The notes under the pieces are model-generated. The model was not told the DNA's origin. It searched no databases and saw only the letters and a program-made list of their open reading frames with translations. A program made the position numbers and the translations under genes. This document shows, one piece after another, positions 32,385 to 38,415 of a DNA stretch of 64,000 nucleotides (position 1 is the first letter of the stretch; each line of letters begins with the position of its first letter). This stretch comes from Mantamonas sphyraenae STR306 (Eukaryota > Protista > CRuMs): contig JAPMXV010000039.1 of the NCBI GenBank assembly GCA_026936335.1, forward strand, positions 168,530 through 232,529, given 5' to 3'.

Positions 32385-33152
32385 ATGGCCAGGGCAACCT
32401 ACAAAAACCTGGCCCCGCTGCGCGATCGCGGCCTACCATTCTTCCTGCACCCCATGTCGCAACTCTCCACCGCATCCAAAAATGTTGTTGTGGCAGGTGC
32501 CACCGGTGCGGTTGGAAGCCGTGTGGTCCACTTCCTGGCATTGGACGATCGTGTGGAGGAAGTTCGGGCTCTCAGTCGTCGCGACATTGACGAAGATGCT
32601 GCCTGCGAATTGTTTGAGCTCGAAAAAGAGCAGTTGGCAAAGGTGAAGTGCTACAAGGTGGACTACGAGCAAGAAACGTTTCCAGACGAAGCCTTCGAAG
32701 GGGCCGGCATTGGCATTTCGTGCCTGGGCATCTACACGCGCGATGCGAAGGACGAAGAGCACTTTCGCCAGGTGGAAATCACGCACAACCTCCACGTGGC
32801 GACACGTGTGGCTGCCCAGGCACCGGGGGAGGCACGATGGTCCTATCTCAGTGGCCAAGGAGCCAAAGAGGGGGGCTGGGCGATGTTTGCACGCGTCAAG
32901 TACGACGCGGAAGAGGCGTTTCGCAGCGTCGAGGGGATGGGGCTTGCCGTGACGGTGCGTCCCGGAGGAATCACAGGCAGGAAACAGTACCTTTATTGGG
33001 GAGACAAGGTTGCCGAGTGGTTGCCCAAATCATTGACCATCCACGCGGACGAGATCGCCAAGGGGATGATTGCCGCGGTCTTGCTGCCCAAGGACGAGGT
33101 GGAGCTCGTGTACGAGAACAAGGAACTCAAAGAGCTTGCAGAGAAGCTTTGA
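32385..33152 (+). CDS. NAD(P)-binding atypical SDR oxidoreductase, TIP30/HTATIP2-like
   Basis: VVVAGATGAVG Rossmann motif, ALSRR, ISCLG, YLSGQGA, FARVKYDAE, VRPG. Confidence 0.8.
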   Translation: MARATYKNLAPLRDRGLPFFLHPMSQLSTASKNVVVAGATGAVGSRVVHFLALDDRVEEVRALSRRDIDEDAACELFELEKEQLAKVKCYKVDYEQETFPDEAFEGAGIGISCLGIYTRDAKDEEHFRQVEITHNLHVATRVAAQAPGEARWSYLSGQGAKEGGWAMFARVKYDAEEAFRSVEGMGLAVTVRPGGITGRKQYLYWGDKVAEWLPKSLTIHADEIAKGMIAAVLLPKDEVELVYENKELKELAEKL

Positions 33153-33201
33153 TGAAGATGATGAAGATGATGGTGGTTCTTTATCGTTTGTCCCTCAAAA
33201 A

Positions 33202-34712
33202 TCAATCCTCATGGGTCTTGCCGCCGTTGTTGCAACGAGGCACAGGGTATGTCTCACCCTTCACCTCCAACTGTGCATACTCACACTCGTACTGTCCACG
33301 GAAGGGGAACTCGCCAGCCTCACGCACCACGACGTTGTCAAACACCACCCCGGTCATCGGGTGTGTGGAGTTGCCCTTGATCACACCGGGTGACAGCCAC
33401 GGACGGTCCACAAACACGTCCTTGAGCACAATGTTGGCAAACGTCACACAGCCCTGCGTGGGACAGTGCTTGCTAATGGGATAATCCAGGGCACACTTGC
33501 GTCCCAATGCCTCGTGCGGCTCATGCTGCTGCTGCGGCCCAATCCAGATGGCCCACCAGCGTGGCTCCGTAATCGTCACGTTTTCGTACACAATGTTCTC
33601 GATGATGCCCGAGTTGCTTCCGTCACACGTTGGGTTGCTCTTGATGTAGATGCCCTTTGCAGTCTTGGGCATGTTGATGTCCCGAAAGGTGATGTTGCGC
33701 ACGCAGTTGACTGCAGGCACAGGAGGCACCGAACCAATGGATGCACCCACCCCCTGGAGGGTGAGACGTTCAAACACCATGTTCTCACTGCACTTGGAGT
33801 TGACACAATCGCCACTGCACGGCTTGACTGCAATCGAGTCGTCGTCGTTCACAATAGTGCAGTCGTGCACATACACATTCTTCCCACTGGGATCAATTCC
33901 GTCCGTGTTCAAATCCTCCAATTCCAACCCACCCAGTTCATGCTTGGCACGTCCGATGGACTCGGCCTTGGACTTGCGATCCACCTGGATGTGCACATTC
34001 CACACCTCCGCGGTGTCCACGTCGCCCAACCACACATGGTAATAGCCGGCGTCGTGCAGGAGCAAATCGTGCATGTCCACGTTGACACACTGCACCAAAA
34101 AGAACATGATGGGTCGTCCGTGCTTGATCTTGCCAAACAGCATGGCATCCCACCAGCCCTTGCCCTGGCCCTGCACCACACCACCCCCATTGATGGTGAT
34201 GTCCTTGCACTCCATCATGGTGATGAAGTTCAACACGTGGTCTCCCTTGCTGTTCAACGGCCAATCTTCCCAGCTGGCATGGGCTGCCAACACACCTTCA
34301 ATCGACACTTAGACACACACCAGCACCCACCAACAACGTGTCAGCACACCACACACACCCTCTTCCAATCTGCAAAGCCACCCACCCACCCTTCCAACAT
34401 AGAAAGCACTCCTGTCGACAACTCACGTGTGATGTTCTGGGTGCCGTTCTGAGCACGGAACGGATGTGTGGTGAACCAGTTGGCTTCGTTGTTCACGTTC
34501 TTGTCCCCCACCGCAGGGATGACAATCACATCGCCCGGTTTGGCGCTGTCAAACGCCTTGTTGATGGCCACTGCATTGGCCTTGGCTGCCTCCAGGCTGT
34601 TGTCGCCTGCCTTGGCTCCCATGGAGCGTACGTCAATCACAGCTGCGTTGGCCACACTCACAAGCACACACGCCACCACAAACACCGTGCTCCATGCAAA
34701 CGTTGTTCTCAT
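33202..34712 (-). CDS. Secreted GH28 polygalacturonase-like glycosidase, copy 2; intron 34308-34426
   Basis: Signal peptide MRTTFAWSTVFVVACVLVSVANA; same motifs and same phase-1 intron position as copy 1. Confidence 0.9.
33216..33921 (-). repeat. Right arm of 706-bp inverted repeat (partner 24642-25347)
   Basis: Direct sequence comparison; antisense ORF translations are also identical over most of the tract. Confidence 0.95.
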
Positions 34713-35036
34713 GGCCTCTTTCTGTGTCCCCACCATTCCCTTGCATGTGTCAGTGCCCTTCCACAACTCCATCTGTGTCTCAAACGCCTGTGCACACGCG
34801 TAAAAACCCACAAAGCACTTCCGTTGCCGGAAATGCGCGTGGATGCCACAATTGCCAAAGTCTCCCCCTTTGTCAACCCAAACCACACACACCACACACA
34901 CACACATTCAATGTGAATCCCATCCCCTCCCACACGGCCCAATCCAACATGCACACAACACACACACATGGTCAACGCACAACAAACAAAAAAAAGATTG
35001 GCGGCCAGGACGCCAACCCAACCCAACCCCACCACA

Positions 35037-35576
35037 ATGTCCGACAAGCAGGGAGGACAGGCAGAGGAGGAGGCGAGTGAGCCAAAGCAAAGGCAGGCAA
35101 AGTCGGCGTCGCAGTTGGAAACCATCAGTGCTCACATGGAAGAGTTCAAGAACGCCTCCATGGAGGAGCACAAGAGCTGATTTAAAAAGACATTGAAGAA
35201 GCTGTTCAACATGGGTGCGGATGCCCTGCGTGCTGTGGGCAACAAGATCGATGATGCCCAACATGAGGATGGGGAGGAGGATGGCGAGACCGAGGAGGAT
35301 GGCGAGACCGAGGAAGAGGAGGACGTGGTTGATGCGGATGCTGCTCCTTCCGCTTCTTCACACACGGCTACGGCCGCCAGTGTGTACGAAGCGACGTGGT
35401 TTACACGTGCCACCTCCTCCTCCTCCTCCTCCTCCTCTCCACCCCTTCCCCGTGTGCATACGCATGTGGGCATGGCAGCAGCAGCTGTACACCTGCCAGC
35501 TGGTGTGCTGAACAGAAATTCCGCCGACCCAACTCTGCTCGCCCCGTACTTCTTTCTGGACGAGCAGTTGATGTAA
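35037..35576 (+). CDS. Small acidic protein with in-frame TGA at codon 48 (35178-35180); candidate selenoprotein
   Basis: ORFs 34968..35180 and 35193..35576 share a frame; helical EEFKNASMEEHKS*FKKTLKKLF pattern continues across the TGA; SECIS-like hairpin downstream. Confidence 0.6.
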
Positions 35577-35725
35577 ATTGGCCCACCCAATTGTTTGGCC
35601 TTAAGGCCACCACAAGACAAACGCCCCCAAATGTGGCATGATGATGATTCATCATTCCAAAATCACTCTCCTTCAATGTCGAAAACACCACCGCCAACCC
35701 AACTTCCCCCCACACAAAAAAATTA

Positions 35726-35790
35726 CGGCTCAGGACGTGCCTTGCGAGAAACCACACCGTCGATTGCGTGTGTTCCAAGGTGCCGAAGTC
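35726..35790 (+). promoter_or_regulatory. Putative type II SECIS element with non-canonical AGGA/GA core
   Basis: AGGAc-gtgccttg(c)gag-AAA-c-cacac[loop]gtgtg-ttc-caaggtgc-cGAa: tandem GA/GA, 11-bp helix II, unpaired AAA, apical mini-helix. Confidence 0.55.
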
Positions 35791-35923
35791 ACTCTACGAC
35801 CCACGGGGGGATTGGTTGTGGCACCAAAGAGATGAAACCCCCAGATTTCAACACACACACACACTCTCTCTCTCTCCGCCTGCTGCGCCATTGTGGCCCA
35901 CGTTGCTGTTTTGGTTGGCATCC

Positions 35924-36492
35924 TCAATTGCTGGCTGCCACTTCGTCCTCGTTGAGAAGCATGTTGGGCACACCGCCCTTGATGGGGTATTCCCTACCGC
36001 AGTTCTGGCACTGCATGGTTGCCTCCACCACCTCCAGGTTGTTCAACACATTGTGCAATGCCTCCAGAAGCTCTTTGTCCTCGTCGGCGTCCTCTGGAAG
36101 CTCTTCCGGCATGTCTTCCACCCCACACTGCTCAGTGGTCGCGTGTGTGTGTGTGTGTGCGTCAGCCTGAAGGGTCACTCAATCACTCACCTGCGGCCAG
36201 GATTACTTTCACCCCCCCCCACAGCCTCACCGTGGCCACGATATGACACAACGACAATGGCAGTGGATAGAAAGCAAGTGGGCAAGACTAAAGGGCAACG
36301 TACAGCAGCAGCAGCATCGACCAGCGTTGCGTATTCGAGGCGAGGAAGCATGCGACGCACATAGGCGGCGTTAAACTCGTGCTCCTCCTGCTCCACCTCG
36401 GTCACATCCGACAACGCCAACGGGTACCCTGCATCCTTTTTGACACAGTCGGGAATGGCACATGTGAGCATGTTGTGGATCAGAAGTTTCAT
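35924..36492 (-). CDS. TRM112: Methyltransferase activator Trm112; intron 36128-36303
   Basis: MKLLIHNMLTC...GYPL...MLPRLEY / LEALHNVL...MQCQNCGREYPIKGGVPNMLLNEDEV. Confidence 0.95.
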
Positions 36493-36630
36493 GTTTTCTT
36501 CTTCCCTTCCTCTGCTCCTTCCTTGTGGCTCCCCCCGCGCGTTCCCCGTTTCTGCCCACATTCGAATTCATTCTCCTTCCTCCCCCCCCCCTTCGTTCCT
36601 CGTTGTGGTGTCGCATGCAACGAAATCGTC

Positions 36631-38177
36631 TCAAACATCGTCACGCTCAATCATAGAGGTGCGTCCGGGACCGACGCCAATCCACTTGATGGGCACACCG
36701 AGGAGTTCCTCGACACGCTTGACGTAGGCCTGGGCCAGGTCGGGAAGGTCGTCAAAGGTTTGACACTCGCTGATGTCTGTCTTCCAGCCTTCAAACACTT
36801 CGTACTCGACCTCCACACCCTTGAGGGACTCCAGGGAGGCAGGGAACATGGTCACCTCCTTGCCATCCACAATGTACTTGACGCCCACCTTGATTTCATC
36901 AAAGGCACTCAGCACATCCAACTTGGTCAGGTTGATGTACGTGTACCTGTTGACGGCTTGCGAGTAGCGCATCTGCACCACATCCAGCCAGCCGCAACGA
37001 CGCGGACGACCCGTGGTCGTGCCCACCTCGTGGCCCTCCTGCGACAACTTGTCATGCAGATCACCCTCCAACTCGGTGGGGAAGGGTCCTTCGCCCACAC
37101 GCGTGGTGTATGCCTTCACCACGCCGTACAGCTCACTCATGAGCAGCGGCGAAATGCCCAGACCCGTGGCAAAGCCACCCGCCGTGCAGTTCGACGATGT
37201 CACAAAGGGATACGTGCCAAAGTCGATGTCCAGCATGGTGGCATTGGCTCCCTCCAACAGAAGCGTCTTGCCCTCGTCCAGCTGTTCGTTGAGGTAGGCC
37301 ACCGTGTCACAGGTGATCGGCTCCACACGCTGCCACAACTCCTTGTACTTGGCAATCTCCTCCTCCTCGTCCACATCGTCCAGCTGGCCAGGGAATGCCG
37401 CCTTCAGTCCATTCAACAGCTCACGCAGCTTGTCTCCAAACGACTCGTGCTTCAGGTCGCACAGACGCAACCCGTCACGGTTCATCTTGCTCGAGTACGT
37501 GGGTCCAATCCCTCGCTTTGTCGTCCCTGTGGTGGTGTATCAAGGGGTGTGTGGGGAAGAAGAAGGGCCACCGGATGCAAGGGCACACCATCGTCGATGC
37601 CACCGCAGATGGGTTCACACGTGTCAGTGTCAGCGTCGAATTCAACGCCAGCCGCGTTTGTGAGGCGCCTGCTCTTCTTCCAATTCCCGTTTTTCGTGTC
37701 TTTTTCCGACACAAACCACGGCCCCGGCCACGAGCACACCCCACACGCCGCACGCCACACACACATACCGATCGAATGGTCCTTGAGGGCCTGTTCGCGC
37801 AGACCGTCAACCTTCTTGTGAAAGTCAAAGACCAGGTGGGCGCGGTCGGAGATGAAAAGGCGACCCGCATAGTCGACTCCCTTCTCCTCCAGGTTGGCAA
37901 TCTCCTCCTCCATGGTGGGAAGATGTACCACCACACCGTTGCCCACCACACACACGCAACCCTTGTTCACAATGCCGCTGGGCATCAGATGGAACTTGTA
38001 CTTGACGCCGTCTGCCACAATCGTGTGTCCCGCGTTGGCGCCGCCCTGGGCACGTCCACACATGTCGTAACGTCCTGCAAGCAGATCCACCAGCTTGCCC
38101 TTGCCTTCATCACCCCACTGGGCACCGATCACTGCCACCACCTGCGGAACCTTGTCGCTAGAGGACGTAGAAGACAT
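36631..38177 (-). CDS. ADSS: Adenylosuccinate synthetase; intron 37527-37768
   Basis: [81 protein letters not shown]. Confidence 0.98.
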
Positions 38178-38415
38178 CTTCGAGTGAGTTTGCTCTAAAA
38201 GTTTTCAGGTGAGTGGAGTGGAGCAGGTCGGGATGCCACGTTCCTGACTGCCCACTGCACAGCGCCACCTCCAGCATCAACGCCGAGGCTGTACACACGC
38301 GACACAGCACATGGGGACTGCATGCATGCGCGACGGGAGATCCAAACAAACAGCCACCAGACAACCCACACACACCTTCCCCTGCCGCACAGCGAATCAC
38401 ATTCCAACAGCGCGC

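What the first reader, a model, noticed from the sequence alone, without database searches (positions are those of the whole stretch)
35037..35576. Candidate unrecognised selenoprotein: in-frame UGA within a helical motif
Seen: one frame runs from ATG 35037 to TAA 35576, interrupted only by TGA at 35178 (MEEFKNASMEEHKS-U-FKKTLKKLFNMG). The amphipathic helix pattern continues across the stop, and no convincing splice pair removes it. TGA is a true stop in many neighbouring genes, so this is not a code reassignment. The gap to the convergent TRM112 gene (347 nt) is the longest convergent gap in the window (others 45-249 nt) and holds a SECIS-like hairpin. Inference: UGA encodes selenocysteine. 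The protein has no thioredoxin-type CxxU/UxxC motif and matches no selenoprotein family I recognise. I recall small plant/algal proteins with an EEHKxC[FL]KxT..K[ML]F motif that has Cys at this position, but this is unverified.
Basis: partly seen in the sequence, partly recalled or inferred. Interest (0 to 1): 0.85.

Follow-up and report, generated by a model that had tools for sequence, protein, structure and literature searches.

The report
New selenoprotein related to plant UPOX
A small gene of the deep-branching protist Mantamonas has a stop codon exactly where an unstudied plant stress-protein family always has cysteine, plus a downstream recoding signal, so it probably makes a new selenium-containing protein and points to that cysteine as the working residue in plants.

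Summary
Observation confirmed; interpretation supported. ATG 35037 to TAA 35576 is one frame broken only by TGA 35178-80. The TGA is seen in three DNA runs and in an unspliced RNA contig, and codon bias continues past it. The genome (Mantamonas sphyraenae by assembly size) has tRNA-Sec, SepSecS, eEFSec, SPS2, SBP2-like and PSTK-like genes and seven ordinary selenoprotein genes. Searched apart, the two pieces align to plant residues 25-55 and 57-68 of an unnamed ~93-aa land-plant family. Residue 56 is Cys in 160 of 161 members retrieved, and the ORF has no other Cys. One member is named 'marker for oxidative stress response protein', which I link from memory to Arabidopsis UPOX1. A type II SECIS lies at 35727-35790 with a non-canonical GGA/GA core, shared with a CxxU AhpD-like gene; Sec-MsrA probably has a related core. 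A model built from the AhpD SECIS alone ranks it first in the window. The scan had already noted this hairpin and similar cores elsewhere in this genome. Open points: RNA contigs do not join ORF and SECIS (134-nt hole), no second Sec-bearing homologue was found, and nothing was tested biochemically. About 85% a new, non-thioredoxin selenoprotein family.

The parts
35037..35177 (+). Coding piece 1 (47 codons): acidic N-terminus, then first half of the conserved helical core ending in HMEEFKNASMEEHKS
   Evidence: 26.8 bits to plant-only HMM; aligns to plant residues 25-55, 45% identical
35178..35180 (+). In-frame TGA, inferred selenocysteine 48; falls on the family's invariant Cys (HxxC becomes HxxU)
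35181..35576 (+). Coding piece 2 (131 codons + TAA): FKKTLKKLFNMG completes the core, then an acidic repeat and a low-complexity tail with weaker codon bias
   Evidence: aligns to plant residues 57-68; codon adaptation 0.68 for codons 49-100, 0.53 beyond
35032..35582 (+). Unspliced RNA-derived contig, depth 457; strand not shown by contigs
   Evidence: run X3 record 20
35583..35716 (.). Stretch with no RNA contig laid; unexplained. Right edge coincides with an allelic difference at 35716
35727..35790 (+). Type II SECIS-like element: helix I GGCU/AGUC, CA, core GGAC (35733-36) / CGA (35784-86), 11-bp helix II, AAA (35749-51), 5-bp mini-stem
35924..36492 (-). Convergent neighbour TRM112 (intron 36128-36303); its 3' UTR probably overlaps the SECIS on the other strand

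Best explanation
The gene encodes a 179-aa selenoprotein. The ribosome reads UGA 48 as selenocysteine, directed by the type II SECIS about 150 nt after the TAA, whose GGA/GA quartet replaces the usual UGA/GA. Shown: sequence, homology, machinery, SECIS shape, transcription of the ORF. Inferred: recoding itself, and SECIS and ORF on one mRNA. The protein is the Sec form of an unnamed land-plant family (probably UPOX1/At2g21640 and paralogues): a short amphipathic helical core (H33, E36, F37, A40, S41, E44, H45, U48) between disordered acidic arms. Most likely function (inferred, about 60% given Sec): a one-site thiol/selenol redox protein. Sec48 sits one turn from His45 at the edge of the hydrophobic face and reacts with peroxide or a partner's disulfide; it must be recycled by an outside thiol, because the protein has no Cys. 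In plants the same job would be done by the HxxC cysteine, perhaps resolved by the second invariant Cys of SCRKKKS, which Mantamonas lacks.
For: Two pieces searched apart leave a one-codon gap on Cys56 of P0027. Cys is in that column in 160 of 161 retrieved proteins. A plant-only HMM hits only this locus in the window, 37.6 bits, E 5e-13, against 4-12 bits for chance pattern hits. Codon bias stays high after UGA (0.71 before, 0.68 after, 0.26-0.39 in shifted frames). Single copy, no Cys paralogue. Machinery. A strict SECIS rule hits only sense-strand 3' regions of in-frame-UGA genes in 182 kb of scanned strands, 4 of 64 ORF ends, all Sec genes, and 2 of 3000 shuffles of the gap. The same AGGAC core follows a CxxU AhpD-like gene. 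A covariance model from that one element scores the candidate 23.2 bits, E about 6e-4, next best 14.4. GGA/GA has precedent in Toxoplasma and Neospora SelT (PMC2647825).
Against: No RNA contig covers 35583-35716, so the SECIS is not shown on this mRNA. The contig over the SECIS is joined to minus-strand TRM112. The core departs from the UGAN/KGAW consensus (PMC3753652). The SECIS rule was partly tuned after seeing the candidate, and the rule misses TrxR and MsrA elements. The hairpin is not unusually stable (z -0.52; controls likewise), and the genome-wide model search returned only its training element. No second species with UGA at this column was found. Homology rests on about 45 residues. 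The redox role is inference; the structure model is poor (pLDDT 60).
Confidence: 0.85

Rival explanations
1. UGA is a true stop. The gene is a recently truncated or decaying member of the family that yields a 47-aa peptide, and the hairpin is chance or a leftover.
For: TGA is 83% of stops here. TGC/TGT to TGA is one base change. The RNA contig ends 6 nt after the TAA.
Against: It is single copy and the most deeply covered RNA contig in the stretch. 131 open codons with normal codon bias follow, including the second half of the motif. The TGA is fixed in all four runs of a diploid. A SECIS-shaped element of the genome's own type lies behind it, and none follows 60 ordinary ORF ends.
Confidence: 0.07
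2. Selenoprotein gene with two 3' ends: most mRNA is cut just after the TAA and lacks the SECIS (giving the 47-aa product), and only a minor long form makes the selenoprotein. This is compatible with the best explanation but changes the regulation; its probability overlaps with it.
For: Zero RNA contig depth at 35583-35716, while intron pre-mRNA shows at depth 3.
Against: The next contig starts exactly one base after an allelic difference (35716), as an assembly bubble would, and the tool filters records. No poly(A) loose end is listed. TGTAA beside the stop is not enriched in 3' regions (5 vs 3.7 expected) and occurs between stop and SECIS in TrxR and GPx.
Confidence: 0.15
3. SECIS-independent readthrough puts Cys or Trp at the UGA by near-cognate decoding.
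For: Cys in homologues would fit Cys insertion; leaky UGA is common in eukaryotes (own knowledge).
Against: Context is UGA-UUUAAA, not the UGA-CUAG readthrough motif (motif from own knowledge). A SECIS and full machinery are present.
Confidence: 0.04
4. Sec is inserted, but it serves as a metal ligand with H33, E36, E44 and H45 (metal or Fe-S binding or sensing) rather than as a redox catalyst. About 25% given Sec.
For: Invariant residues are His, Glu, His, Cys on a helical core; there is no thioredoxin fold.
Against: In known Sec/Cys pairs the residue is nearly always redox-active (own knowledge). The plant family's only functional label is oxidative-stress marker.
Confidence: 0.2

Closest known systems
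Land-plant ~93-aa family SCRKKKS...HIDEF.[HN]AS.[DE]EHKxC[FL].KT..KMFG (no Pfam). P0030 is named 'marker for oxidative stress response protein'; probably Arabidopsis UPOX1/At2g21640, At4g39235 and At3g05570 (link from memory, no Arabidopsis sequence retrieved)
   Same: Core H..EF..AS..EHK.[C/U]F.KT..K.F in register without gaps; acidic, disordered N-terminus.
   Different: Sec instead of Cys; no SC of SCRKKKS; 179 aa with an acidic repeat and long tail; non-plant lineage (CRuMs).
Eukaryotic selenoproteins in general (GPx, TrxR, DIO, SelK, Rdx/SelW/H, MsrA, SPS2 in this genome)
   Same: In-frame UGA at a conserved Cys column, 3' UTR type II SECIS, same machinery.
   Different: No thioredoxin fold, no CxxU/UxxC, no C-terminal CU; HxxU in a helix; no resolving Cys.
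Toxoplasma/Neospora SelT SECIS with GGA/GA quartet (PMC2647825 footnote)
   Same: G replaces U at the first quartet position.
   Different: Here preceded by A (AGGAC), type II, and used by about 4 of 10 elements seen in one genome, in an unrelated lineage.
Ostreococcus hypothetical selenoproteins 1-3 and MSP (PMC2375036); algal PDI_e, AhpC_b, SymSEP (PMC7539508)
   Same: Lineage-restricted selenoproteins of unknown function.
   Different: Hypothetical 1-3 sequences are unrelated; the algal novelties are thioredoxin/AhpC-type.

Membership tests
Eukaryotic selenoprotein | In-frame UGA retained in the mature transcript | tested here: met
   unspliced RNA contig 35032-35582, no variant at the TGA
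Eukaryotic selenoprotein | Homologues with Cys (or Sec) at the UGA and conservation on both sides | tested here: met
Eukaryotic selenoprotein | Sec machinery in the genome | tested here: met
   tRNA-Sec 64.6 bits, anticodon TCA; SepSecS; eEFSec domain 4; SPS2; SBP2-like (91, 94, motif read by eye); PSTK-like below cut-off
Eukaryotic selenoprotein | SECIS downstream on the same strand | tested here: met
Eukaryotic selenoprotein | SECIS on the same mRNA molecule | tested here: inconclusive
   134-nt hole in RNA contigs; strand unknown
Eukaryotic selenoprotein | Selenium in the product | not testable with these tools
   needs 75Se or MS
Canonical eukaryotic SECIS (RF00031, UGAN/KGAW) | UGA/GA quartet | tested here: not met
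   core is GGAC/CGAA; RF00031 finds nothing here or anywhere in this genome
Type II SECIS, GGA/GA variant | Tandem GA/GA, helix II of 11-16 bp, apical As, helix III, helix I | tested here: met
   same register as DIO, SelK, SPS2 and AhpD elements
Thioredoxin-fold selenoproteins (CxxU/UxxC) | Trx fold and redox motif | tested here: not met
   no Pfam match; family model is all helix; no Cys in the ORF
Plant UPOX-like family | H..EF..AS..EHK.C.KT..K.F core | tested here: met
Plant UPOX-like family | N-terminal SCRKKKS motif with Cys | tested here: not met
   aligned stretch is basic but has no Cys: a homologue, not a typical member
Plant UPOX-like family | Family contains Arabidopsis At2g21640 | tested here: inconclusive
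   only the transferred name of P0030 and a mis-fused RADIALIS-like Myb neighbour in P0088; no paper names the paralogues together

The most novel reading that the evidence does not exclude
An undescribed, ancient eukaryotic selenoprotein family with a helical HxxU site, whose Cys form survives in land plants as the mitochondrial-stress marker UPOX1 and kin. It is recoded by an AGGA-core SECIS class that standard tools miss, which implies more hidden selenoprotein families in deep protists.
Probability: 0.6. Interest if true: 0.82.

Novelty: new variant of a known kind. Interest (0 to 1): 0.72.

Why it matters
New eukaryotic selenoprotein families are rare, and most have a thioredoxin-type site; this one does not. 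A Sec/Cys pair usually marks a catalytic redox residue, so it gives a direct hypothesis for a plant family that, if the UPOX1 link holds, is widely used as a mitochondrial stress marker (PMC3529323, PMC12903413) with no known biochemistry: mutate the HxxC cysteine. It extends a family so far seen only in plants to a lineage at the base of Amorphea. The genome's frequent GGA/GA SECIS cores, invisible to RF00031, suggest that protist selenoproteomes are undercounted.

Tried and rejected
Direct searches with the pieces found nothing: piece 1 in the 5.8-billion set and the Atlas; first 60 aa of piece 2 in the 1.84-billion set; Pfam gave only composition hits. The plant family was reached by a degenerate DNA pattern in metagenomes. 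The profile search listed only the top 120 of 813 hits, all plants where named, so algal and protist members remain unseen. No relatives in GTDB, IMG/VR or PDB; four pattern hits there are chance. Fold search in the Atlas was blank. Rejected SECIS candidates: the AUGAUGAUGA hairpin near 35638, a hairpin inside the ORF near 35465, and a rule hit at minus 49105 inside a coding region. Upstream in-frame ATG 34968 rejected as main start: the RNA contig begins at 35032 and run X2 has a 1-nt insertion at 34987. MAFFT alignments of SECIS elements were unusable for a multi-sequence model. The primary GGGA-SECIS paper was not held.

Full report
Observation. The frame runs from ATG 35037 to TAA 35574-35576 with one TGA at 35178-35180, codon 48. 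The ORF has no Cys codon. Four public runs were laid on 33000-38200. X1, X2 and X4 look like DNA. X3 behaves as RNA: it has CT..AC joints at the introns of three minus-strand neighbours and no depth in the divergent promoter gap. X3 holds one contig over 35032-35582, without gaps, at depth 457, the highest single contig listed. No run lists another letter at the TGA. So it is neither an assembly error nor spliced out of the main transcript. TGA is the ordinary stop in this genome (53 of 64 codon-biased ORF ends). Codon adaptation is 0.71 before the TGA, 0.68 for codons 49-100 and 0.53 in the tail; shifted frames give 0.26-0.39 over codons 1-100.

Organism and machinery. The assembly has 25,061,354 bases in 78 contigs, mean 321,299.41, the figure given for Mantamonas sphyraenae (CRuMs; biallelic SNPs) in PMC10492846. 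It holds tRNA-Sec (64.6 bits, anticodon TCA), SepSecS, eEFSec domain 4, SPS2 with its own UGA, an SBP2-like L7Ae protein (motif judged by eye) and a PSTK-like match below cut-off. Ordinary selenoprotein genes with in-frame UGA are GPx, an Rdx-family CxxU protein, deiodinase, MsrA, TrxR and SPS2, plus SelK, judged from its family match and SECIS. An AhpD-like CxxU gene is also present.

Homologues. Direct searches with the pieces were blank. A degenerate DNA pattern for EEHKx[C/U][FL]KKT found six metagenome contigs. Five are one moss gene, which also matches upstream of the pattern (H.DEF..ASM against H.EEF..ASM). Its first exon retrieved a land-plant family of about 93 aa with no Pfam model. 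An HMM from 55 plant proteins alone hits the six-frame window only at this locus, across the stop: 37.6 bits, E 5e-13. Chance hits selected by similar patterns score 4-12 bits. Searched apart, piece 1 aligns to residues 25-55 of P0027 and piece 2 to residues 57-68; residue 56 is Cys. That Cys is present in 160 of 161 retrieved proteins; the exception is a truncated prediction. The gene is single copy here. One member is named 'marker for oxidative stress response protein'. From memory that is the annotation of Arabidopsis At2g21640, UPOX1, a mitochondrial marker of organellar stress (PMC3529323; PMC12903413). I could not align At2g21640 itself, so this link is likely, not shown.

SECIS. Rfam RF00031 finds nothing anywhere in this genome, so I derived the local pattern from control genes. 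GPx, TrxR, DIO, SelK, Rdx and SPS2 have AUGAC cores, a 10-12 bp helix, AAA and a YGA 3' arm. At 35727-35790 the candidate has the same register as DIO, SelK and SPS2 (helix I, CA, core, and helix I resuming straight after CGA), but the core is GGAC. The same AGGAC core follows the CxxU AhpD-like gene and a second in-frame-UGA ORF. Sec-MsrA has a probable GGGAA core, read by eye. A strict rule hit only sense-strand 3' regions of UGA genes in 182 kb of scanned strands, 4 of 64 ORF ends (all Sec genes), 4 times in 1.92 Mb of shuffled window and in 2 of 3000 shuffles of the gap. The rule was partly shaped with the candidate in view, but AhpD and SPS2 were found after the scan was written. A covariance model from the AhpD element alone ranks the candidate first in 64 kb (23.2 bits, E about 6e-4; next 14.4); it did not report it genome-wide. 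GGA/GA quartets are known from Toxoplasma and Neospora SelT (PMC2647825).

The weak point. X3 has no contig at 35583-35716. The contig over the SECIS starts at 35717 and is joined to minus-strand TRM112. It starts one base after an allelic difference, as an unresolved assembly bubble would, and the tool filters records. A real 3' end before the SECIS is not excluded. The TGTAA at the stop is not enriched in 3' regions and sits between stop and SECIS in TrxR and GPx, so it is no sufficient cleavage signal.

Mechanism. Shown: sequence, transcription of the ORF, homology, machinery, SECIS shape. Inferred: UGA 48 is read as Sec, giving a 179-aa protein with a helical core (residues 27-60; family model helical but low confidence) between acidic disordered arms. 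Sec48 lies one turn from His45 at the edge of the hydrophobic face. I put Sec insertion at 0.85. Given Sec, I put a one-site redox role recycled by an outside thiol at about 0.6 and a metal-ligand role at about 0.25. Plain stop (0.07) and near-cognate readthrough (0.04) fit the SECIS and codon evidence poorly.

Comparison and novelty. It works like a eukaryotic selenoprotein and meets every testable defining feature except mRNA continuity. It is not a thioredoxin-fold or CxxU member. It is unrelated to the Ostreococcus hypothetical selenoproteins, and nothing like it appeared in the passages read from an algal survey. It is a homologue of the plant family but lacks its first invariant Cys. No second Sec-bearing member was found, as expected for genes cut at 47 aa by annotation; the profile search showed only its top 120 of 813 hits. 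Verdict: probably a new selenoprotein family with a variant SECIS; interest 0.72.

Noticed in passing
L024 (G000:C22:15308-15863, minus): AhpD/CMD-like gene with CxxU and an AGGAC-core type II SECIS right after its stop; AhpD-like selenoproteins are known to me mainly from prokaryotes.
   Followed up: partly
L023:1329-1715 minus (G000:C61:173442): About 129-aa hydrophobic ORF with in-frame UGA, ending in TAA, followed by an AGGAC...AAA...UGAA hairpin; no Pfam match in either piece. A second candidate new selenoprotein.
   Followed up: partly
L015:2226-2275: Sec-MsrA has a probable GGGAA/GGAC core; about 4 of 10 SECIS elements seen in this genome have GGA instead of UGA. The candidate and L023 pair it with a 3' GAA.
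   Followed up: partly
L007:1908-3125; L013; L034: GPx SECIS lies about 1.17 kb after its stop; the Rdx and SPS2 elements have unusually long apices.
   Followed up: partly
L009, L033, L006, L014: Sep15/SelF-like and SelU-like genes, one GPx and one MsrA match without in-frame UGA and have no strict SECIS hit.
   Followed up: partly
window 35340-35576: The C-terminal 80 codons have weaker codon bias, a CCT run and intron-like GTGT stretches, yet stay in the RNA contig; possibly a recent extension of the frame.
   Followed up: partly
window 34968-35036: In-frame upstream ATG would add 23 basic residues; run X2 has a 1-nt insertion at 34987 and the RNA contig starts at 35032.
   Followed up: partly
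window 35717-38200: One RNA contig runs through TRM112 and adenylosuccinate synthetase without a break, so UTRs overlap or abut.
   Followed up: no
window 33163-33216: Allelic replacement of 52 nt by 21 nt in a 49-nt convergent gap, seen in DNA and RNA runs.
   Followed up: no
L002 (G000:C54:305427-305508): Second tRNA-Sec model match, 42.6 bits, below the cut-off; probably another long-arm tRNA.
   Followed up: no
L040-L043 (G000:C10): An L7Ae-family gene appears twice with identical scores about 43 kb apart: a duplication or an assembly repeat.
   Followed up: no
P0088: A Nyssa family member is annotated fused to a RADIALIS-like Myb domain, probably a neighbouring gene.
   Followed up: partly
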